64,000 nucleotides of DNA from Phallusia mammillata (Eukaryota): the NCBI GenBank assembly GCA_965637545.1, contig OZ281501.1:15562001-15626000 (forward strand), read 5' to 3'. Position numbers and translations under genes: made by a program. This document shows, one piece after another, positions 11,914 through 59,348 of this stretch. Numbering within the stretch: the stretch's first letter is position 1; the number at the start of each line of letters is the position of its first letter. The notes beneath the pieces were generated by a model. It saw nothing but the letters and a program-made list of their open reading frames with translations. It made no database searches and was not told the origin of the DNA.

Positions 11914-12416
11914 CAGTGGTTCCCAACCTTTTTGTTGTCATGGACCCCTTTTTATAATTTTTATGGGTCCACGGACCCCCAACACAATTTAGTCTTGTTA
12001 TGTTTTTTGTTTCCTGCATTATGCGTTATCATACTTTCGCTTATCATGGCAGGATTTGATCAACCTTCGCAGTCCCTCAATCTCAATAAAGTTCTGTACT
12101 GTAGCAGTCAGTGCAAAGAAGAGATACATTTTCTGGTGTACAATACTTGAAACACAGCACAACAAGTTCTATTGTTAATGTGTGTTGTGATGTCACAATG
12201 GAGGTAACAATTACGTTGGAGGTAACAATTAAGTTTTCCTGATCCAAGAGTTTGATAAACAGTTTGCACTCAGATGCAGGATTGTAAAAACGGTTTGGGA
12301 ACTTAAAAATATTGTACTGTTGTTAATGCTACTACAATTGTTTGCCTCCACGGACCCCCTGAAACCATCTCACGGACCCCTTGGGGGGTCCGCGAACCCC
12401 AGGTTGGGAACCACTG
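11914..12416. mobile_element. hAT-type MITE
   Basis: TIR CAGTGGTTCCCAACC / GGTTGGGAACCACTG; TSD GTGTATTG / GTGTATTA. Confidence 0.9.
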
Positions 12417-12630
12417 GTGTATTATTTAATATATGTAGCGGTCGATTGTATGAACTAAAGGTGTATTTTAACAATTTTTTACAGCCAGTTAAATCTTTTT
12501 TTCAGGAATCACTCCAAAATTGTTGCACCGAACCGAATGGGCAAGGCATGTTTTTATGGCATGTTACTCCCCACAAACTGCAGGGTCATAAGATGGATAC
12601 ACTAGCCCATGTGGCCCATGTCTTGTCATC

Positions 12631-12682
12631 AGCTGGAGTAAAGAGATCTTATAGGTCAAAACAGTGTGTACTATCTGCAGCT
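12631..12682 (+). ncRNA. Degenerate type I hammerhead ribozyme (core mutated)
   Basis: AGCTGGA GTAAAGA GATCT-TAT-AGGTC AAAA CAGTGTGTACTA TC TGCAGCT; aligns to the consensus but the CUGAUGA core is destroyed. Confidence 0.65.
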
Positions 12683-12866
12683 TATCATCTATTGGCCTAA
12701 AGCTTTCATATTGGTACAAGGACACTGGGCCTACATCACTTTGATTCCCAAACAGTTGCTTGAGCATTGTGAACCAGTGGTTTATGTTGTATGGAACAGA
12801 TTATTGGTGAGGCATTGGTTTTCGGCCAGTTACTCCCAACAAACTGGAGGGCAATGTCTTGTTATC

Positions 12867-12917
12867 AGCTATACTGATGAGCCTTATAGGTAAAATCAAT
12901 ATGAACTGTCTGCAGCT
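12867..12917 (+). ncRNA. Degenerate type I hammerhead ribozyme
   Basis: AGCTATA CTGATGA GCCT-TAT-AGGT AAAA TCAATATGAACTG TC TGCAGCT. Keeps CUGAUGA and GUC; G12 lost; 236 nt from the previous copy. Confidence 0.7.
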
Positions 12918-12969
12918 TCTGTTTTTAAAATTCTAATTGCAAGACTTAGTAAATTATTTGGCTTTATAG

Positions 12970-13463
12970 CAGTGGTTCTCAACCTAGGGTTTGTGGACCC
13001 CCAAGGGATCCGTGAGATGGTTTTAGAGGGTCCATGGAGGCAAACATTCTAAATACCATTACCCAACAGTACAATATTTTGTAAGTTTCAAAACCGTTTT
13101 TACAATCCTGCATACAAGTGCTAACTGTTTATCAAACCTTTGAATTAAGAAAACTTGCTTTTTGTGTGATTGTTACCTCCATTGTGATATCACAACACAC
13201 ATGAACAACAGAACTTATAGTGCCTAAATGTTTCAAGTAGTGTACACCAGAAAATTTATTTCTTTGTTGCATTGACTGGTACAGTACAGAACTTTATTGA
13301 GATTAAGGACTGTGAAGGTTGATTAAAATTCTGCCCCCAAAAGTGAAAGTATAATAACGTATAATGCAGGAAACAAATAACACGACTAAATGACTTTGGG
13401 GGTCCTCGGACCTATAAAATATAAAAAAGGGCTCTGTGACTACAAAAAGGTTGGGAACCATGG
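12970..13463. mobile_element. hAT-type MITE, same family as 11914-12416, opposite orientation
   Basis: CAGTGGTTCTCAACC ... GGTTGGGAACCATGG; TSD CTTTATAG on both sides; interior is the reverse complement of 11914-12416. Confidence 0.85.
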
Positions 13464-15258
13464 CTTTATAGGCTACTTTGTATCCAGATATGATTTTTTC
13501 ATAGTAGTGTTCTCTTAGCTATAACATTATTATTAACATGCTAACCTAAAAAGTATGTTTAAGTGGCTTACATATTTTGTAATTTGTTGAAAAAGCACAT
13601 TGTGCAGAAAGTACAGATACTTGACAGATTCATTTTGATTTATTTTTCAGATCCTCTCCTAATTTTTGGATTTCTTGGTAGACCTTTTGGAACATTTGAG
13701 AAAATAACTGTTTGGCAAATGTAAACAACAAAGCATGAATGAATCAATCCACAACATATTGAAATAAATTATTTAATTCATCATCATCAACTTCTAGAAT
13801 ATCAAGTGTTGTATTGCGGAAACTTTGACAATGAGGATCATGGTAAAACTTTTGCAATACACTAACAAAATCTTGCTTTAACTTTATAGAGCTCTGGCTT
13901 GTTGCCTGGCCAAAAACTTTCAAGTATTTGAGCAACACACTTTGTAAGTAGCAGAAATTATGATGAAGGATAAGAAAGACTGTTGCTCTATTAAAGGAAT
14001 CAACTGGCCATGTGGTTGCATGGTGGAAAACTTGCTAACAATTTTACTTCCATTTGTAAACTTATTTTTTGCCTTAAATAAAACATAACCTCCTAAATAT
14101 GAATATTTAGACTTGAAAGAAAGATTTATGCTCTTTACCTGTTTTGTTTTATGAAACAGTCTCAATGTTCATCTGATCAGATACAAGAATCTTTCTTTTA
14201 TTCTATTGTCTGTGGGAGATTGCTTAACTAACAAAAGTGTTTCAGCTCCTAAATATATGTTTAACTATATGTTGCTTGAGTTTATGGTGGTGGTCATGAT
14301 GTCTGGCAATAGTTGTGACACCTTGAATTCTTTAAAATAACATTTTTGCTTCACAGCACACTTTTGCATATTATACTCTTTAATGAGAAAGGTCTGATCT
14401 TGAAACTTGGTGTAATGACTCCTGTGTTATATGGAAAATCTATCCATTGTCAATTAAAATGAGTTACTTGAGGTAAGAATAAGGTCTATGTTCAAGCGTG
14501 ACTTATCGTCTCTCCTAAGTTCCTGATTGGGGTCAAGGTTGTTAATAATTGGTACATAAAAAAATTATTTGGGAACGTGCAACCAGTTTAGGAAAGTTCC
14601 ATTTCACCAGACTTTAATTTAATCTGCAATGTACTTGATGCACCCTTTAATATTAGGGTAAATGCTAAAATCACAGGCTGAAAAGATTCTTAAACGTGCG
14701 ACTTTGTCTCTCACAAACGACTAAATAGATGTCGATATAATCTTGTAGATGTGCCATCTGTTTTGTTCGGCTTGATAACGCCATTATTTAGCCCCCTAAA
14801 ATGGGTAAAAATAAAAGAACAGTTTGTTCATTGTCCCATTTAAAGGTTTCGTTTGTTGTGTTTCACCATAGTATACTAACATGGTAGTCCAGCTCCTCTT
14901 TTCCTCTCGGTTCTTTTATTATCCTGCGCATTTCGGTTACGCATGACTAACACTGCACGTCGCCTGAAGTTTTGTATGAGGTACGTGGTAAACAGCTAGT
15001 TTTTAAAAGCCGCTGGCGACAAATCCGTGTCTGTTTTGAAGTTTTTTAGTTATTGGGTTTATTGTTTAATGCATGTAGAGCTATTAAAACGATTTTAGCT
15101 TTCAATTGTATGAACTCTTTGAAGTGTATTTTTAAAAACTTATAGACAGGCATCTTCTTGTAGAAATTGCTTTAAAATTGAGGCAATGAACCGAATTGGC
15201 GAGTCAAGGTTTTTCAGCATGTTACTACACTAGCCAACATGGCCTGTGTCTTGTCATC

Positions 15259-15306
15259 AGGTGCACTGATGAGACCTTGTCAAAACAATGAGCAGTATTT
15301 GCAGCT
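15259..15306 (+). ncRNA. Degenerate type I hammerhead ribozyme
   Basis: AGGTGCA CTGATGA GAC-CTT-GTC AAAA CAATGAGCAGTA TT TGCAGCT; G12>A. Confidence 0.7.
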
Positions 15307-16450
15307 TACTTATCATCTATCTATTGGCTTATTAATCATATTGCCATCACTTTGGTTCCCCAGCAGTTGCTTAATTAGGCATTAAAAATCAGTTGTTTTC
15401 TGTGGTTTATACCCATTTGTGGTATTGAACAGATTTTGGTGAGGCAACATCACCTTCCAAATACTCTAAACTCTATGTTACTTATCACAGCATTTAACTG
15501 TTTTATTGTTTATGATGTCTAGCAATTGTTTTTGTACCTTGAATTTTTTTCAAATAAACTTTTTGCTTCACAGCACTCTTTTGCTTAGTTTCTCATCTAA
15601 TCAGTTCTTTTATGAAAAATCTGCCGCTTGTTGACAGTTTGAAATGAGTAACTTTGGAAAAAATATGGTCTTCGTTTAAGCTTGACTTTTCGTCTGTTCG
15701 AATCGAGTTCCTGGTCGGGTTCAAAGTTGTTAAATATCAGTTGATTAAAAATGCAGTCAGTTTGGCAAAGTTCAATTTTCACCAGACTTTAACTTAATCA
15801 GTAACAAGCTTTATGCACCCTTGAATATGTTAGGTAAAACCACGCTAAAATCACTTCAACGCGTTTAAAGAAGGACTAAAAGGCAAAAAAACTCAGTAAA
15901 TTCTCCCCAACAGCACAATTCCAACCAAACGTAATAATATTACAAATGGTAGATGCATAAAACCGACCACGCACGCTCAGTTTTGTCATTTTCCTGCTCT
16001 GAAAGCACCCAACTCAATGCAAGCATCCGACAAGCGTGCAGAGTTAATCAAGCGTGACGGTAACAATAGCTGGACTAGTCCAGCTCCTCTTTTCCTCTCG
16101 TTTCTTTTATTATCCTGCGCATTTCGGTTACGCATGAATAACACTGCACGTCGCCTGAAGTTTTGTATGAGGTACATGGTAAACAGCTAGTTTTGAAAAG
16201 CCGCTGGCGACAAATCTGTGTCTGTTTTAAAGTTTTTTAGTTATTGGGTTTATTGTTTAATGTATGTAGAGCTATTAAAACGTTTTTAGCTTTCAATTGT
16301 ATGAACTCTTTAAAGTATATTTTTAAAAACTTATAGACAGGCATCTTTTTTGTAAGAATTGCTTTAAAATTGCGGCAATGAACCGAATTGGCGAGGCAAG
16401 GTTTTTCAGCATGTTACTACACTAGCCAACATGTCCTATGTCTTATCATC

Positions 16451-16502
16451 ATGTGCGCTGATGAGACCTTACAAGTCAAAACAGTGAGCAGTATTTGCAG
16501 CT
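16451..16502 (+). ncRNA. Degenerate type I hammerhead ribozyme
   Basis: ATGTGCG CTGATGA GACCTTACAAGTC AAAA CAGTGAGCAGTA TT TGCAGCT; G12>A. Confidence 0.7.
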
Positions 16503-16720
16503 TACTTATCATCTATCTATTGGCTTATTAATCATATTGTCATCACTTTGGTTCCCCAGCAGTTGCTTAGGCATTAAAAATCAGTTTTTTTTCTGTGGTT
16601 TATACCCATTTGTGGTATTGAACAGATTTGGTGAGGAATTAATGTTCTGCCTGTTACTTCCAACAAACTGGAGGGCCATCAGATGGCTACACTAACCAAT
16701 ATGGCATATGTCTTTTAATC

Positions 16721-16778
16721 AGCTGTACTGATGAGACCTTATAGGTCGAAACAGTGTGCACTGTTTACTTCTACAGCT
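16721..16778 (+). ncRNA. Type I hammerhead ribozyme with intact catalytic core
   Basis: AGCTGTA (stem I) CTGATGA, GACCT-TAT-AGGTC (stem II), GAAA, ACAGT-GTGC-ACTGT (stem III), GUU triplet, then TACTTCTACAGCT (stem I with a 6-nt insertion). The core lies 270 nt from the previous copy. Confidence 0.85.
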
Positions 16779-18055
16779 TCTGTTTTCAAAATCCTATAAT
16801 TAGTAAATCACTTGGCTTTATACTGCACTCGGATACGATTTTCATAGTAGCCTACTGTTAGCTATAACATTATTATTAAAAAGCTAACATAAAGTAGTTT
16901 CATATTTTGTAATTTGAAAAAAGAAGCACATTTGTGCAGAAAGTACAGGCACTTTTGACAGTCATTTTGATTTATTTTTCAGAGCTCCTCTTTTAGACCT
17001 TTGGAACATTTTAGAAAAGAGCTTTTTGGCAAACGTGAACGACAAGACATGAATAAATAAATCCACGAATATTAAAACCTATTGGGTACTTTCTCTTTAT
17101 CCATATCAACTTTCAGAATATCACATGTCCTATTTTGGAAACTTTCATAATGAGGATCATAGAAAACTTTTGCAATACACAAAAAAAGTCTAGCTTGTTG
17201 GTTGGCTAAAAAACTTTCTCTCATTTCAGGTACACACTTTGAGAAAGTTGAAGTAACTCTAATGAAGGATAAGTGAGACTTCCAGGCCCTTGCTCCATAA
17301 AAGAAACCAGCTGGCCCTGCGATTGCATGGTGGACAACTTGCTAACAATTTTACTTACTTTTGCAAAATTGTTTTTTGCCTTGAACAAAACATCACCTTC
17401 CAAATACTTTAAACTCCATGTTACTTATCACAGTATTTGACTGTTTTTCTGCACCACTTTATTAGTTGTTTATGATGTCTAGAAATTGTTTTTGTACCTT
17501 GATTTTTTTTCAAATAAACTTTTTGCTTCACATCACTCTTTTGCATGGTTTCTCATCTAATCAGTTCTTTTAGGAAAAATCTACCTCTTGTTGACAGTTT
17601 AAAATGAGTAACTTTGGAAAAAATATGGTCTTCGTTTAAGCTTGACTTTCCGTCTGTCCGGATCGAGTTCCTGGTCGGGGTCAAAGTCGTTAAACATCAG
17701 TTTATTAAAAATGCAGTCAGTTTGGAAAAGTTCCATTTTCACCAGACTTTAGTTTGATCCGTAACAAGCTTTATGCACCCTTGAATATGTTAGGTAAAAC
17801 CACGCTAAAATCACTTCAACGCGGTTAAAGAAGGACTAAAAGGCAAAAAAACTCAGTAAATTCCCTCCAACAGCATAATTCCAACCAAACGTAGTAATAT
17901 TACACATGGTAGATGCATACAACCGACCACACACGCACAGTTTTGTCATTTTCCTGCTCTTAAGGCACCCAACTCAATGCAAGCATCCGACAAGCGTGCA
18001 GAGTTAATCAAGCGTGACGGTAACAATAGCTGGACTACCATGTTAGTATACTATG

Positions 18056-18310
18056 GTTTCACCCTGTAGCCCCGATATTTATCCCACTATCCCCCTAAAA
18101 GGGGTGAAATTTTAAAGAATGTCCCATTTGGATGAAATTTAGACAGGTCGTCATTGTCCCATTTTGAGGTTCGGTTTGATGTGTTACACCCTGTAGCCCC
18201 AATATTTATCCCACTATAGTCCCCTCAAATGGGTGAAATTTTAAACGATGTCTGATTTTAATGAAATTTGGACAGGTTGTTCATTGTCCCATTTTTAGGT
18301 TTCGTTTGTT
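18056..18310. repeat. ~127-bp tandem repeat; its left part (14790-14866) is separated by the P-like insertion
   Basis: CACCCTGTAGCCCC..ATTTATCCCACTAT at 18060 and 18187; TTCATTGTCCCATTT..GGTTTCGTTTGTTGTGTT at 14827 and 18281. Confidence 0.8.
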
Positions 18311-32309: not shown

Positions 32310-32450
32310 CTTTGCAGTATGTTACTCCCAACAAATTGGAGTGTTGACAGAATTAATGCGGCTCATGTCTTGTCACCAACTGGACTGATCAGATCGGTCG
32401 AATTAATGTGCACTGCCTCTACAGTTAACTTATCATCTGTTTTCTCGACG
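32310..32450 (+). repeat. Relic of the HHR repeat monomer upstream of B1
   Basis: GTTACTCCCAACAAATTGGAG..CATGTCTTGTCACCAACTGGA CTGATCA GATCGGTC GAA TTAATGTGCACTG..ACTTATCATCT, shared with the 12.6-16.8 kb monomers. Confidence 0.7.
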
Positions 32451-36200: not shown

Positions 36201-37599
36201 ATGAAAAACCAAAAAGAAACAACCCCTTTGATCAACCCGAGCCCAGAAAACGATGATGCAAGAGGAGGCCCAAATGGGAATGAAGAAGTTGTGCTTCTCC
36301 CGAACGATGGGTGATATAGTTATCATCATGAGTGTCGTGCATGCGAAGCTTTGTATCGGCAACATTTGGTCTCACCAATAATGTCATGGCCAAGTACTTT
36401 AATGTGGAGCCTTGGCAAATTGACTGGCTTTCGAATGTTCGGACTTTTACGATGGTTTTGTTTTGCATACCTCTGTTGTTTATATTGAGAAGATTCAGCG
36501 TGAAAACGTCTATCGTTGTATTGGTCGCATGCTCAGCTGCAAGTTTCACCCTGACCAGTTTGGCAGTTTCATTTCGTCAAGGTTATTTTATCGCCATATT
36601 TGGCCAGGTAATGTCTACTTTTTCCACAACGATCCGGATTCCACTGAAAAGTGCAATCGCTGCTGTATGGTTTCCAGCCAACGAAATCGCCTACGCTGTC
36701 GGTATCATGTTTATAGGAAGGGCTCTTGGAAAAGCTACTGGTGCTGTGGTCGCCTCTCATCTGGGTTCAATCAGTGATAGTCCATCAATAATCCGAATGC
36801 GTTTGTTGGCAGTGTTTGGGTCATTCGCTGCTGTCACATGGGCTGTCCTCGTTGTGTTGTTTATCAAACCACGACCCAAGCACCCTCCAAGCATTGCTCA
36901 AGCCAAAGTTTTGCAGTTACAAGAGTTACAAGAAAGCACTAGCCTCAAAGAAGAGCTAATAAAGTTCAAAAACGTGCAACTAAAACTGTTGACCCAGTTC
37001 ACTTTTTAACAGCGTGGTTTGCAAGAATTACTATCGACCCAGTTCCACGATCCACAACGACTTTGTTATCATCTATACTACAAGCAAACTTCAGCAAGAA
37101 CGGAAATACCAACGTAGACGGAGGCTTTATGATCATGGGCCTTTGGCTCATGTCGATTGTGGGTAGTTTTTCAGCAGGACCTTTGCTAAGCAGAACTGGA
37201 CGTTATAAAGCATCGGTAGTTGTGTCTACCGCCCTGGCAAGCGTTTCTTGCGTTCTTGGTATAGCTGGACTCGCAATTACTTCAATTTCCATGGTTTATG
37301 CCAGCCAAATATTGCTGGGGCTTTTCGTGGGACTTGCATCAGTGAGTGTTACAGAACTGATAGTGCAAGTTACTTATCCAACCCGCATTACAGATGCATT
37401 TGTGTTCAACGTGATTGGTTTAGGAATCATGTTGGTCATTCAAACTACAATTGCTAGATTGTTACTCGAGAAGTTGGGACCTATCACAGCATTTGCTCTA
37501 GAACTGTTGTATCTACTGTTACCAACATGTCTGTTGCCCTTCATAAAGATGCCATTTTACCGCCAAGAAGCAGAAGCCAGTACCACTGAAAATCAATAA
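36201..37599 (+). pseudogene. Subfamily C MFS pseudogene (C2)
   Basis: Colinear with 30049-31443; ATG at 36201; frameshifts at ~36260-36335 and ~36995-37010. Confidence 0.9.
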
Positions 37600-38307: not shown

Positions 38308-38674
38308 CAGACGTGACTCCATTACAGTCTACAAATAAAAAACACACAAAAAAACAGAAGATATCTGTGCATTGTTTTTTTTTCAGTTTCTTATTCACGT
38401 ACATCCTTATCTGGAAACCTATAGTGGTTCAGCAATTTAGCTAAAATGACAAGAGGACAAAAAGACAGTTGTGAGGTTGTTTTGTCACGTTTTCCGGCTC
38501 ACATCTGCATGCAAGCAACTCCCGAGATGTCATTGGGTAACAGTTCTCGAACACTGCGAGTTGTTGAGGAGTGTCCAGAGAGTTTTTCGCAGGCAACATG
38601 TTAGATTTGACGAGAATGATTTTTTTAAAGTAACTTAGCTGAGAACTTTAGCTACTGAAGACCAAAACTATGTG

Positions 38675-38830
38675 GCATGGTACAGATGGTGAGGCATGTC
38701 TTTGCAGTATGTTACTCCCAACAAACTGGAGTGCTGATCGAGCCAATGCGGCTCATGTCTTGTCACCAACTGCACTGATCAGATAGGGCGAATCAATATG
38801 CACTGCGTCTACACCCAACTTATCATTTGT
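38675..38830 (+). repeat. Relic of the HHR repeat monomer upstream of B2
   Basis: GGTGAGGCAT..GTTACTCCCAACAAACTGGAG..CATGTCTTGTCACC AACTGCA CTGATCA GATAGGGC GAA TCAATATGCACTGC..ACTTATCAT. Confidence 0.7.
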
Positions 38831-51569: not shown

Positions 51570-51725
51570 TCGAGCAAACAAATGATAAGTTGGCTCTAGA
51601 CGCAGTGCATATTGATTCGACCTCATCAGTGCAGTTGGTGACAAGACATGAGTTGCATTGGCTCGATAGGCACTCCAGTTTGTTGGGAGTAATATACTAC
51701 AAAGCCATGCCTCACCATTGCTGTA
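51570..51725 (-). repeat. Relic of the HHR repeat monomer upstream of B3
   Basis: Minus strand: TTACTCCCAACAAACTGGAG..CATGTCTTGTCACC AACTGCA CTGATGA GGTC GAA TCAATATGCACTGC GTC..ACTTATCAT; stem II is largely deleted. Confidence 0.7.
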
Positions 51726-52621
51726 CCATGCCACACAGTTTTGGTTATAGTATTCAGTATCTAAAGGGTAGAACACATCCATTTTCTTTACTTTCCATTG
51801 TTCAATTTTCGCATTTAATTTCTCTACTAATCTACTTAAAAAATTATTCCTGTCAAATCTCGCATGTTTAGGAATTGCCTGCGAAAAACTATCTGGAAAC
51901 TGAACGACAGCTTGCAGTGTTTGAGCACTTTTACCCAATGACATCTCGGGAGTTGGTTGCATGCTGATGGAAGCCGGAAAACGTGACAAAACAACCCCAC
52001 AACTGTCCTTTTTGCCATTTTGTCATTTTAGTTATATTTCTGAACCTAAATACCACTATTTAGTTTGTGAATAAGAAACTGACGACAAGGAACAAATGCG
52101 CTTATTTTTTCTGTTTCTTTTGAATTGTAGACGGTAACGTAGTCACGCCTTAAAGGGGAAATAATTCACATATGTTTTGCTGTGACATTTATCCCTTTTT
52201 GCTGTGACATTTAGCGTGGCCACGACATATAGCTTAAAAATAAGTCACAGTGAACATCGATAGTTGTATTTAATACGTAACTTGATTTTTCTACTGAGGA
52301 AAGCGTCAATTTATTTTCCATTCTCTGAATTCGACCCGCAAAAGCTTCTCGTCCGGCCGTTTTAGAGAACTTTACTGAAATCCAAAAGGATATTACCAAA
52401 GAATAACTCAATCCTAAACCGTAAAATAAAGTTTGCTTAAAACGAATATTTATTGCAAATGTTGTACAAATAGGATATCATTTTTGATTAACTCCAAAAA
52501 GAGTTAAGAGTTAGAGTTGTGCTATAATCACATGACACATTTTAAACGTAAACGTTTCTGGATTGTTGTATTTGTTCAAATCAAATTACTCAATAAATCG
52601 AACTCACTGTCAACAGGTTTA

Positions 52622-56919: not shown

Positions 56920-59348
56920 GATTCCATTAATACCCACCAAGGACTTTTTCGTTACAACCGCCTAGTGTTTGGTTTAGCTTTAGCCCCAGCGTTATGGCAA
57001 AAGGCTATGGATCAAGTACTGCAAGGTTTGAAAGGGGTACAATGTTTATTAGATAATATGATAATCACTGGAACAACAGATGTAGAACATAAAGAAAATC
57101 TTAGGAATGTTCTCAAGCGACTGTCGGGGCATGGCTTGGAAGTAAATCGGAACAAGTGTGAGTTTTAAGGACCAAATCGAATTTTGTGGTCATGTGGTGG
57201 ATAAAGAGGGATCGCATAAATCCCACCATAAAATTAGGGCAGTGACGAGTTGTCCAACCCCACAGAATGTGTCCCAGCTACGTTCGTTTCTTGACTTAGT
57301 TAATTATTATCATCGATTTTTGCCCAATCTGTCAACCCTTTTACATCCGTTATGTGAACTTTTAGAGAAAGGTCGTGAATGGAACTGGTCCTTGGAATGC
57401 GCTCAGTCATTTGACAAAGCTCGTAAACTTATGGCTTCTGATAAGGTTCTTACACATTATGATGTAAATTTGCCAATTAAGTTAGCATGTGATGCATCGC
57501 CGTACGGTATTGGAGCAGTTATGTCGCATGTAATGCCGGAAGGCAGTGAACGACCCATTGCTTACATCTCGAGATCTCTGTCAAAGTCCGAGAAAAACTA
57601 TTTGCAAATTGATAAAGAAGCTTTAGCTATTGTGTGAGCTGTACAAAAGTTTCACATTTATTTGTTTGGTCGACATTCTACGCTTGTGACAGACCATAAG
57701 CCTCTTACTTCTATATTTCATCAAAAAAAGCATTCCTGTAATGTCGGCACAACGTTTGCAACGTTATGCTTTAATTTTGTCCGCTCATAATTATTCGATA
57801 GAATACCGCACTGCAACTCAACATGGAAATGCTGATGGTTTGTCTAGATTGCCCCAATGCTCCACTGAGACTTCGTCCGATGTTGCGAGCAGTTTTTATT
57901 TCAAGCAGATTGCCTTTTTTGCTGTAACGGCTGATGAGATTGCCAATCACACACGCTCGGACAAGACTTTGTCACGGGTGTTTGCTTGCGTGACATCGGG
58001 CAATTGGGTGCAGGAAAGTGACATCATGCCGTATTATTATCGAAGAAACGAGTTATCAACATATTAAGGATGTTTGGTTTGGGGACCCAGGGTGGTTATT
58101 CCAGAAAGTTTAAAACCTTCCATTTTGCAGGAATTACACAACCGACACCTGGGTGTTGTGAAGATGAAACAAATCGCTCCAAATTATGTCTGGTGGCCAA
58201 ACCTCGATAAGCACATCGAGGAATTGTCTAAAAACTGTTCGGGGCGTTTACAAAACAGAAACGCACCAGCCATCGTAAAATACCACCCGTGGCAAACATG
58301 TGTTAAACCATGGCAACGCATTCACTTAGATTTTGCAGGTCCTGTTGAAAACCACATGCTCTTGGTGATCGTGGATGCTTATTCTAAGTGGCCAGAAGTA
58401 ATCCCGATGCGTTCGACCACGGCGGCTGCAACCATGGACGAACTTTGCAACGTTTTCTCAAGGAACGGTATTCCTGAAAAAATGGTTTCAGACAACTGTC
58501 CTCAATTTATTTCACAGGAGTTCGAGACGTTCGTAAAGATGAACGGTATTCGTCATTCCAAGACTACTCCTTACTCTCCAGCCACTAACGGCCAAGCGGA
58601 GAGATTTGTACAAACTGTCAAGAGAGGTTTACAATCTATGGCAAACGATCCTGGAACCCTAAAAAGCAAACTTTCAAGATGTTTGTTGTCCTATCGCAAT
58701 GCTCCCCATGCATTGTTAGGGGAGTCCCCCGCCAAGCTGTTCCTCAAGCGCAATTGTAGAACACGGCTAGATCTGGTTCAACCCACGGGAGAAGAAAGGG
58801 TTGAGAATTGTATAGAAAAGCACATCGACAGGCACCACGTGCAGTCACCACGAACATTTGAAGTTGGTCAAAAAGTGGCAGCCTTAGACTATCGTGCTCG
58901 CAGTAAACGTTGGGCGATTGGTGTCATACAAAAAGTTCTCGGGTCTCTGACCTATCTTGTACGTATAAACTGCAAATTTATTTGGAAGCGTCACACTAAT
59001 CAGTTAATTGACATGTCGGAAAATAATGTTCGTGGCAATGTAAATGTAATTCGCCGTGTTTTGATGATTTTGTTTTTGATAACCGTTCCAACATGTCGAA
59101 CGATTCTTATACTCGTTACCCCACGAGAACCCGACAACCGCCAACCAGATATGGGTTTGAGAATTAGAATTTGTTTGTAGTGAGGAGTGTTATATATTTG
59201 TGTTTATTCGTGCGTGTCTTGTATCACCACGTGTGTTCGCTTAAGCGTAACGACCGCTTTATAAGCTCGTGCTTTGCCCTAGAGGTCATTACAAGTATTT
59301 ACGCGAGGAGTGCGCTTTATGCAGTTGAAGGACTTGAGGTTAAACACA
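56920..59348 (+). mobile_element. 5'-truncated Ty3/Gypsy LTR retrotransposon (RT C-terminus, RNase H, integrase, 3' LTR), degenerate
   Basis: GLFRYNRLVFGL..WQKAMD (YLDD>LLDN), LACDASPYGIGAV..ERPIAY..EALAIV, H-X3-H/WWP zinc-binding region, DFAGP..SDN..AERFV. Stops and frameshifts. Purine tract GTAGTGAGGAG, then TGTT...CACA (59188-59348) as the likely LTR. Confidence 0.9.

What the first reader, a model, noticed from the sequence alone, without database searches (positions are those of the whole stretch)
12631..16778. Retrozyme-like tandem repeats with type I hammerhead ribozymes
Seen directly: five aligned motifs give the consensus AGCTGCA-CTGATGA-GACCT(TAT)AGGTC-GAAA-CAGTGTGCACTG-TC-TGCAGCT, a complete HHR (7-bp stem I, canonical core, GUC site). 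They sit in monomers spaced 236 and 270 nt. Established: tandem type I HHR repeats of a few hundred nt are the hallmark of metazoan non-LTR retrozymes, which are processed to circular RNAs. The copy at 16721-16778 keeps an intact core (GUU site). This looks like an unannotated retrozyme family.
Basis: partly seen in the sequence, partly recalled or inferred. Interest (0 to 1): 0.85.

Follow-up and report, generated by a model that had tools for sequence, protein, structure and literature searches.

The report
Decayed hammerhead retrozyme relics inside DNA transposons
The five hammerhead-ribozyme motifs are real but broken leftovers of one old insertion of a small self-cutting retroelement (a retrozyme, a kind already described in animals). 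That insertion was later copied passively inside a 2-kb DNA transposon, while intact copies of the retrozyme are abundant elsewhere in this genome.

Summary

The family is a 282-nt non-coding, type I hammerhead retrozyme. Its insertions carry the Penelope-like signature: 10-17-bp target duplications, an inverted 5'-truncated arm and a one-sided ~30-nt tail.

The window holds no retrozyme array, and Tandem Repeats Finder reports none there. Its motifs lie in three relics, 1.6, 0.8 and 1.3 units long and 66-72% identical to the active monomer. These descend from one ancient insertion into a 1998-bp TIR DNA transposon (7-bp target duplication). The window holds three copies of that transposon, one of them 99.95% identical to copies on other contigs.

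Four motifs have lost catalytic G12 or other core bases. The fifth (16721-16778) keeps the core letters but has C17 changed to U and a 6-nt insertion at the helix III/I junction. About 21 transposon copies share that exact version.

No Rfam model reaches its threshold, even on intact copies. The scan had already reported this family on other DNA of the same genome. It is a known kind of element and of low interest.

The parts
12483..12982 (+). Oldest retrozyme relic, about 1.6 units at 66% identity to the active 282-nt monomer. It holds motif 1 (12631-12682) and motif 2 (12866-12920). The reliable part of the alignment ends near 12935.
   Evidence: Local alignment to a monomer trimer; core and stem differences; neither motif folds as a hammerhead
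15225..15442 (+). Retrozyme relic, 0.8 unit at 67% identity, inside transposon copy B. It holds motif 3 (15258-15306): G12 to A, C17 to U and a 4-nt deletion in helix II.
16417..16786 (+). Retrozyme relic, 1.3 units at 72% identity, inside transposon copy C. It holds motif 4 (16451-16502; G12 to A, C17 to U, helices I and III broken). It also holds motif 5 (16721-16778; core, helix II and helix III intact, C17 to U, 6-nt insertion before the 3' strand of helix I).
   Evidence: the same defects are present in all 12 transposon copies examined
16076..18055 (+). Transposon copy C: positions 19-1998 of a 1998-bp non-coding TIR DNA transposon, 99.95% identical to a copy on another contig. The outer 18 nt of its left end are missing.
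14867..16077 (+). Transposon copy B: element positions 1-579 plus 1332-1980 (internal 752-bp deletion), 92-94% identical. It is joined to copy C through an 18-nt perfect palindrome at 16068-16085.
12436..14674 (+). Old, diverged relative (63-73% identity) of the same transposon, collinear with element positions 230-1757. It carries the retrozyme relic at the same internal position with the same 3' junction.
14860..14866 (.). Left copy of the 7-bp target duplication GTTTCAC that flanks the B+C composite.
18056..18062 (.). Right copy of the same 7-bp target duplication GTTTCAC.
11917..12415 (.). Insertion of an unrelated ~500-bp repeat into the old transposon relative, upstream of the relic. Its inverted partner lies at about 12960-13460.
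   Evidence: Inverted repeats I1-I6; sequence
12960..13460 (.). Second copy, in opposite orientation, of the same ~500-bp repeat, inserted just after the relic.

Best explanation
The five motifs are neutral, decaying relics of one ancient retro-insertion. About 1.6 units of a 282-nt non-coding type I hammerhead retrozyme landed inside a non-autonomous TIR DNA transposon. Each transposon copy made afterwards carried the relic along as cargo, and the window happens to hold three such copies: one old and two young, the young pair joined end to end. The relics do nothing here. Four ribozymes have lost catalytic bases, and the fifth has an altered cleavage site and a disrupted helix I. Releasing a monomer needs two working cleavage sites, which no copy in the window has. 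The parent family is live or was recently live elsewhere in the genome. The inferred life cycle of that family is as follows. An oligomeric transcript self-cleaves after GUC. The ~282-nt monomer is circularised by a host RNA ligase. A Penelope-like element reverse transcriptase and GIY-YIG endonuclease copies it into short tandems at staggered target cuts, priming from both ends. That would produce the target duplication, the inverted 5'-truncated arm and the one-sided tail. Shown here: sequence, copy numbers, insertion anatomy, predicted ribozyme fold and carriage by the transposon. Inferred: cleavage, circles and the identity of the mobilising enzyme.
For: Family: 232 exact 52-nt ribozymes and 1525 core matches against 0 controls. 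The monomer is 282 nt, and one locus, L045, holds a 3.0-unit array at 99% matches. The intact 53-mer folds as a canonical three-way junction at its minimum free energy, -17.6 kcal/mol. Of 20 examined loci, 15 (16 insertions) have an inverted arm. Clear target duplications of 10-17 bp were read at L002, L007, L008, L009, L013, L022, L025, L030 and L045, and by eye at L016 and L020. One arm ends right after the ribozyme and the other runs about 30 nt further. These are the features listed for Penelope-like insertions in Craig et al. 2021 (PMC8557442, section 6). The genome has at least 65 matches to a Penelope-like ORF (weak RVT_1 and GIY-YIG domains). All 14 Penelope tails fetched and the two tails in L055 carry a minimal hammerhead-like motif with a covarying helix I. 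Carriage: window 16076-18055 is 97-100% identical to at least 18 full copies on other contigs. These have 28-nt or longer TIRs and 7-bp target duplications. The motif-5-specific 35-mer has 21 genome hits, and all 18 with 0-1 mismatch lie within listed transposon copies. All 12 copies checked share the same ribozyme defects. The old relative has the relic at the same element position with the same 3' junction, and there the counterpart of motif 5 is badly decayed, so there has been no long-term conservation.
Against: The young transposon copies are too similar to one another to show whether motif 5 is under selection. Its core, helix II and helix III are intact, so residual cleavage cannot be excluded by computation. 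No target duplication of the original retro-insertion inside the transposon could be recognised. No Penelope-like element with a tail related to this retrozyme was found: blastn of the monomer against 14 tails gave no hit at E<=0.01, and the L055 tail gave only an 11-nt match at E 0.07. The mobilising enzyme is therefore inferred from insertion anatomy alone. The transposon's superfamily and autonomous partner are unknown.
Confidence: 0.85

Rival explanations
1. The window holds a genuine retrozyme locus: a tandem array transcribed and processed by its own hammerheads into circular RNAs of 240-270 nt.
For: Two motifs per relic lie 235-270 nt apart. Motif 5 has an intact core. Retrozymes of this size are known (PMC7229834).
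Against: No tandem array is detected. The partner motif in each pair lacks G12 and its helices. The relics are only 66-72% identical to the active monomer. The three sets share flanks because they sit in copies of one transposon.
Confidence: 0.04
2. Motif 5 is a still-active or co-opted ribozyme that the DNA transposon carries for its own use, for example to cut read-through transcripts.
For: Core, helix II and helix III are perfect in about 21 copies. The predicted fold is a three-way junction at -18.1 kcal/mol, z-score -2.2. In some copies a C-to-U change in the 5' strand of helix I restores pairing with the changed 3' strand.
Against: The copies are 97-100% identical, so the intactness carries no information about selection. 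In the old relative the same motif is ruined. The minimum-free-energy fold pairs A13 and A14 with U17 and U1.1, and the 6-nt insertion displaces helix I. Shorter transposon forms lack this segment altogether and still multiplied.
Confidence: 0.08
3. The hammerhead repeat is the terminal repeat (pLTR) of an autonomous Penelope-like element rather than a separate non-autonomous element.
For: The insertion anatomy is Penelope-like. Li et al. 2026 (bioRxiv 10.64898/2026.07.22.740005) found Xenopus retrozymes related to Penelope pLTRs.
Against: The direct-repeat spacing is 282 nt, not about 3 kb. There is no ORF in or between units. All 16 Penelope tails examined carry a different, minimal hammerhead and show no similarity to the monomer. 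None of the listed Penelope ORFs lies within 3 kb of a listed retrozyme hammerhead.
Confidence: 0.03

Closest known systems
Metazoan non-LTR retrozymes (Cervera & de la Pena 2020, NAR 48:5054, PMC7229834)
   Same: Type I hammerhead in a non-coding unit within the 170-400 nt range. Short tandem copies, no LTR, GC below 50% (49.6%). Target duplications longer than 4 bp. A stable helix III, as in the invertebrate retrozymes that cleave as monomers. Coexistence with Penelope-like elements that bear minimal hammerheads.
   Different: Arrays seen here are short (up to 3 units in the loci examined), and most insertions have an inverted truncated arm. Expression and circles are untested. No paper in the searchable library reports a retrozyme from an ascidian. 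The window copies themselves are dead cargo in a DNA transposon.
Penelope-like elements and their minimal hammerheads (Cervera & de la Pena 2014, PMC4209133; Craig et al. 2021, PMC8557442)
   Same: The same insertion anatomy: partial tandem, inverted 5'-truncated copy, and a 30-40-bp tail at one end.
   Different: The retrozyme has no RT/GIY-YIG ORF. Its hammerhead has a 5-bp helix III and no extra base between positions 9 and 10.1. The Penelope tails of this genome have that extra base and a 1-bp helix III with a palindromic loop.
Schistosoma Sm-alpha and newt satellite 2 hammerhead repeats
   Same: A type I hammerhead embedded in a repeat of a few hundred bases that is dispersed or tandem in an animal genome (from established knowledge, not tested here).
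   Different: There is no SINE-like promoter or poly(A) end and no long satellite arrays. Insertions show long target duplications and inverted arms.
Non-autonomous TIR DNA transposons carrying captured sequence
   Same: The carrier has TIRs of at least 28 nt, a 7-bp target duplication, no ORF, and near-identical dispersed copies. Another copy carries a Ty3-like pol fragment.
   Different: The superfamily is not established. The 'P-like' label from another scan note rests on the target-duplication length only, and no transposase was found.

Membership tests
Hammerhead ribozyme, type I (Rfam RF00163, clan CL00010) | Conserved core CUGANGA ... GAAA with an NUH cleavage site | tested here: met
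   Met by the family consensus (232 exact copies) and, letter for letter, by motif 5 with H17 = U. Not met by motifs 1-4, which have G12 to A and other core changes.
Hammerhead ribozyme, type I (Rfam RF00163, clan CL00010) | Three helices around the core, with helix I open | tested here: met
   The intact 53-mer has the three-way junction as its minimum-free-energy fold. Motif 5 forms a distorted version in which A13 and A14 are paired. Motifs 1-4 do not fold this way.
Hammerhead ribozyme, type I (Rfam RF00163, clan CL00010) | Score at or above the Rfam gathering threshold | tested here: not met
   Window: no hit; best sub-threshold hit is Hammerhead_3, 26.7 against 48.5 bits. Intact genomic copies: RF00163 scores 22.8 against 34 bits. 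The long helix III fits the small model poorly.
Hammerhead ribozyme, type I (Rfam RF00163, clan CL00010) | Self-cleavage | not testable with these tools
   Needs in vitro transcription.
Metazoan non-LTR retrozyme | Type I hammerhead within a non-coding repeat of about 170-400 bp | tested here: met
   282-nt monomer. The longest stop-free stretch in a dimer is 93 codons.
Metazoan non-LTR retrozyme | Tandem arrangement of units | tested here: met
   Genome: 3.0 units at 99% matches in L045 and several dimers. Window: not met; only 0.8-1.6 decayed units and no Tandem Repeats Finder array.
Metazoan non-LTR retrozyme | Target duplications longer than 4 bp; no LTR, PBS or PPT; GC below 50% | tested here: met
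   Target duplications of 10-17 bp. GC 49.6%. No LTRs were seen in the loci. PBS and PPT were not searched for.
Metazoan non-LTR retrozyme | Expression as linear and circular RNA of unit length | not testable with these tools
   No transcriptome is available here.
Penelope-like element (autonomous) | ORF with reverse transcriptase and GIY-YIG endonuclease | tested here: not met
   None in the window region or in retrozyme loci. Such ORFs exist elsewhere in the genome.
TIR DNA transposon (the carrier) | Terminal inverted repeats and a target duplication of fixed length in dispersed copies | tested here: met
   TIRs of at least 28 nt, and a 7-bp duplication in at least 10 of the 11 other-contig copies (one left end is mutated) and around the window composite.
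TIR DNA transposon (the carrier) | A related autonomous copy encoding a transposase | tested here: inconclusive
   The only long copy fetched (L056, 5.1 kb) holds a Ty3-like pol fragment, not a transposase. Other long copies were not fetched.

The most novel reading that the evidence does not exclude
This canonical-hammerhead retrozyme uses Penelope-like integration machinery although its sequence is unrelated to the tails of this genome's Penelope-like elements, all 16 of which (as sampled) carry a different, minimal hammerhead. If so, template choice by the Penelope reverse transcriptase would depend on something other than shared 3' sequence, such as the hammerhead fold or a circular template. 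Retrozymes would then not simply be cut-down pLTRs. A lesser variant is that a DNA transposon is spreading a still-cleaving hammerhead (motif 5).
Probability: 0.25. Interest if true: 0.5.

Novelty: new member of a known kind. Interest (0 to 1): 0.25.

Why it matters
It matters little for the window itself. The motifs are fossils, and the family belongs to a described class. The scan has already reported the same family on other pieces of this genome.

Three modest points of value remain:
- It documents an abundant, apparently recently active retrozyme with a full Penelope-type insertion signature in what earlier scan notes call an ascidian, a group for which I found no published retrozyme.
- It shows a ribozyme-bearing retroelement relic being multiplied at second hand by a DNA transposon. 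This inflates hammerhead counts and could mislead motif-based retrozyme censuses.
- It shows that Rfam's hammerhead models miss even perfect copies of this family.

Tried and rejected
- Rfam at gathering thresholds on the whole window gave nothing.
- A whole-genome search with RF00163 gave 0 matches, but only 73 of 32475 candidates were scored and the controls did not ring, so it is uninformative.
- A loose CTGATGAG...GAAAC pattern in the window was no better than chance: 4 hits against 1.4 expected.
- I tried to name the organism from an MFS transporter ORF and got no homologues in the protein collection. The organism is therefore not verified by me; earlier scan notes call it Phallusia mammillata.
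- Literature searches for the exact ribozyme sequence gave 0 papers.
- A GIY-YIG hit 1.1 kb from a hammerhead (L053) looked like a Penelope partner. It is a 314-aa ORF whose twin locus L054 has no hammerhead, so I treated it as coincidence.
- Two hammerhead dimers 4686 nt apart (L043) looked like pLTRs, but no ORF lies between them, so this is a segmental duplication.
- A 5.1-kb copy of the carrier transposon (L056) was checked for a transposase. It holds a Ty3-like RT/RNase H/integrase fragment instead.
- blastn of the monomer against 14 Penelope tails gave no hit at E<=0.01, and the L055 tail gave only an 11-nt match at E 0.07.
- One DNA search failed on pattern syntax, and one script crashed and was rerun.
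- I built no family-specific covariance model, because the genomic copies are near-identical and would give a sequence model only.
Full report
**What is in the sequence**

Hammerhead-like motifs lie at 12631-12682, 12866-12920, 15258-15306, 16451-16502 and 16721-16778. The first two are about 235 nt apart and the last two about 270 nt apart.

- Motif 1 has four core differences, including G12 to A.
- Motif 2 has lost G12 and both strands of helix III.
- Motifs 3 and 4 have G12 to A and C17 to U, with broken helices I and III. Motif 3 also has a 4-nt deletion in helix II.
- Motif 5 keeps every core letter and perfect helices II and III. It has C17 to U and six extra bases between helix III and the 3' strand of helix I.

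Many of the changes are CpG to TpG or CpA.

**Is it more than chance, and do models see it?**

The 29-nt core occurs twice in the window at up to 3 mismatches, against none in 100 shuffles.

Rfam at gathering thresholds finds nothing in the window. In E-value mode only 16705-16756 gives a sub-threshold Hammerhead_3 hit: 26.7 bits against a gathering score of 48.5, E 0.017. This says little, because perfect copies from elsewhere in the genome also fail. RF00163 gives them 22.8 bits against a threshold of 34. A whole-genome RF00163 search was uninformative.

**The parent family**

The 52-nt motif has 232 exact copies in the 240-Mb assembly. The core has 1525 matches at up to 3 mismatches, against 0 for the reversed control.

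Other properties of the family:
- The unit between successive cleavage sites is 282 nt (L027:1725-2006), with 49.6% GC and no ORF.
- One locus has a clean 3.0-unit array at 99% matches (L045).
- The intact 53-mer has the canonical three-way junction as its minimum-free-energy fold: helix I 7 bp, helix II 5 bp, helix III 5 bp with a GUGC loop.
- The whole monomer folds somewhat better than shuffles (z-score -2.35). In that fold the ribozyme is tied up in an alternative hairpin, as is usual for such RNAs.

**How the family inserts**

I examined 20 loci. Fifteen of them (16 insertions) consist of a forward piece joined head to head with an inverted, variably 5'-truncated piece.

Clear target duplications of 10-17 bp flank the insertions. 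They were read at L002, L007, L008, L009, L013, L022, L025, L030 and L045, and by eye at L016 and L020.

One arm typically ends just after the 3' strand of helix I. The other arm runs about 30 nt further.

Craig et al. 2021 (PMC8557442) list partial tandems, an adjacent inverted 5'-truncated copy and a one-sided 30-40-bp tail as the hallmarks of Penelope-like insertions.

The genome has at least 65 matches to a Penelope-like ORF. The query ORF shows weak RVT_1 and GIY-YIG domains. All 14 tails fetched, and both tails in L055, carry a minimal hammerhead-like motif 220-860 nt after the ORF. That motif has an extra base after position 9, a palindromic loop 3 and a covarying helix I, as Cervera & de la Pena 2014 describe (PMC4209133).

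None of these tails resembles the retrozyme monomer. No listed Penelope ORF lies within 3 kb of a listed retrozyme hammerhead.

The family therefore fits the published class of metazoan non-LTR retrozymes (PMC7229834). A 2026 preprint argues that this class depends on Penelope-like elements (10.64898/2026.07.22.740005). In this genome the link rests on insertion anatomy alone, not on shared sequence.

**What the window copies really are**

Tandem Repeats Finder reports no array at 12300-17000. Local alignment to a trimer of the monomer shows three relics:
- 12483 to about 12935: 1.6 units, 66% identity.
- 15225-15442: 0.8 unit, 67% identity.
- 16417-16786: 1.3 units, 72% identity.

The flanks of the three relics are homologous to one another. 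The reason is that window 16076-18055 is one copy of a dispersed 1998-bp element. At least 18 full copies on other contigs are 97-100% identical to it, and many shorter forms exist.

The copies have terminal inverted repeats of at least 28 nt. In at least 10 of the 11 other-contig copies examined they are flanked by 7-bp target duplications, most of the form GTnnnAC. The terminal 30-mer has 96 genome hits, which corresponds to about 48 elements.

Mapped onto this element, the window holds three copies:
- Copy B at 14867-16077, with an internal 752-bp deletion.
- Copy C at 16076-18055, 99.95% identical to a copy on another contig.
- An old relative at 12436-14674, 63-73% identical.

B and C are joined through an 18-nt perfect palindrome that lacks the outer 18 nt of both ends. 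The B+C composite is flanked by the 7-bp duplication GTTTCAC.

The retrozyme relic sits at the same internal position in all three copies, with the same 3' junction in the old and young copies. The five motifs therefore go back to one insertion event, later multiplied by DNA transposition.

All 12 transposon copies examined carry the same ribozyme defects. The 35-mer specific to motif 5 has 21 genome hits, and all 18 with 0-1 mismatch fall within listed transposon copies. Some older copies still have GUC at the cleavage site.

**Can anything in the window still work?**

Motifs 1-4 do not fold as hammerheads and lack G12.

Motif 5 folds into a three-way junction (-18.1 kcal/mol). In that fold helix III is extended by pairing A13 and A14 with U17 and U1.1, and five bases bulge before helix I. 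I judge it impaired, but only an assay can say.

Releasing a monomer needs two working sites, which no copy here has. In the old relative the counterpart of motif 5 is ruined. Shorter forms of the transposon lack the segment altogether. Both facts argue against any role for the transposon.

**Comparison and novelty**

This is a new member of a known kind. I found no paper on retrozymes or hammerheads in ascidians, apart from an Rfam count of nine type I loci in Didemnum.

I could not verify the organism. Earlier notes of this scan call it Phallusia mammillata. They report the same family, with the same conclusion, on other pieces of this genome. Another note read this very stretch as a DNA transposon with ribozyme cargo, which my tests support. 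The 'P-like' label remains untested.

**Verdict**

The family assignment is correct. The 'tandem retrozyme array' reading of this locus is not. Interest is low.

Noticed in passing
window 16068-16085: Transposon copies B and C are fused through an 18-nt perfect palindrome (AGCTGGACTAGTCCAGCT) that lacks the outer 18 nt of both termini. The composite shares one 7-bp target duplication, so the pair may have moved or arisen as one unit.
   Followed up: partly
window 32355-32415 (+), 38671-38805 (+), 51622-51735 (-): Three more decayed relics of the same retrozyme (68-76% identity). Two lie just upstream of MFS transporter ORFs, so they were probably copied along with the genes in tandem duplications.
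   Followed up: partly
window 20205-61674: A cluster of at least eight long intronless ORFs of about 470-515 aa on both strands. The four tested have a Pfam MFS_1 domain, as does a 225-aa fragment at 36332-37009. The protein collection returned no homologues.
   Followed up: partly
window 58074-59180: A 368-aa ORF with integrase zinc-binding and core domains (rve, Integrase_H2C2): a fragment of an LTR retrotransposon.
   Followed up: no
window 11917-12415 and 12960-13460: Two copies of an unrelated ~500-bp repeat in opposite orientation bracket the oldest relic. Together they form a 1.5-kb foldback-like structure (arms 73-90% complementary).
   Followed up: no
L055 (G000:C4:7516000-7525999): A Penelope-like element (705-aa ORF with weak RVT_1 and GIY-YIG matches) with an inverted truncated copy head to head, inserted in a dense array of tRNA genes. 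Its tail carries a minimal hammerhead-like motif with a CUGAAGA core.
   Followed up: partly
L057-L070 (tails of 14 Penelope-like ORFs): Every tail has a minimal type I hammerhead, with an extra base after position 9, a palindromic loop 3 (mostly UAUAUA) and compensatory changes in helix I between families. At G000:C8:5590164-5602118 four ORFs are spaced exactly 3300 nt apart.
   Followed up: partly
L056 (G000:C3:25028800-25034100): A 5.1-kb copy of the carrier transposon holds an 877-codon open frame with RT, RNase H and integrase domains of a Ty3-like retrotransposon. This family has therefore picked up retroelement sequence at least twice.
   Followed up: partly
L009:1530-1614: The head-to-head junction of two retrozyme arms forms a long hairpin that draws sub-threshold microRNA-precursor hits from Rfam (mir-3578 38.6 bits, mir-138 29.6 bits). 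This is a likely source of false miRNA calls.
   Followed up: no
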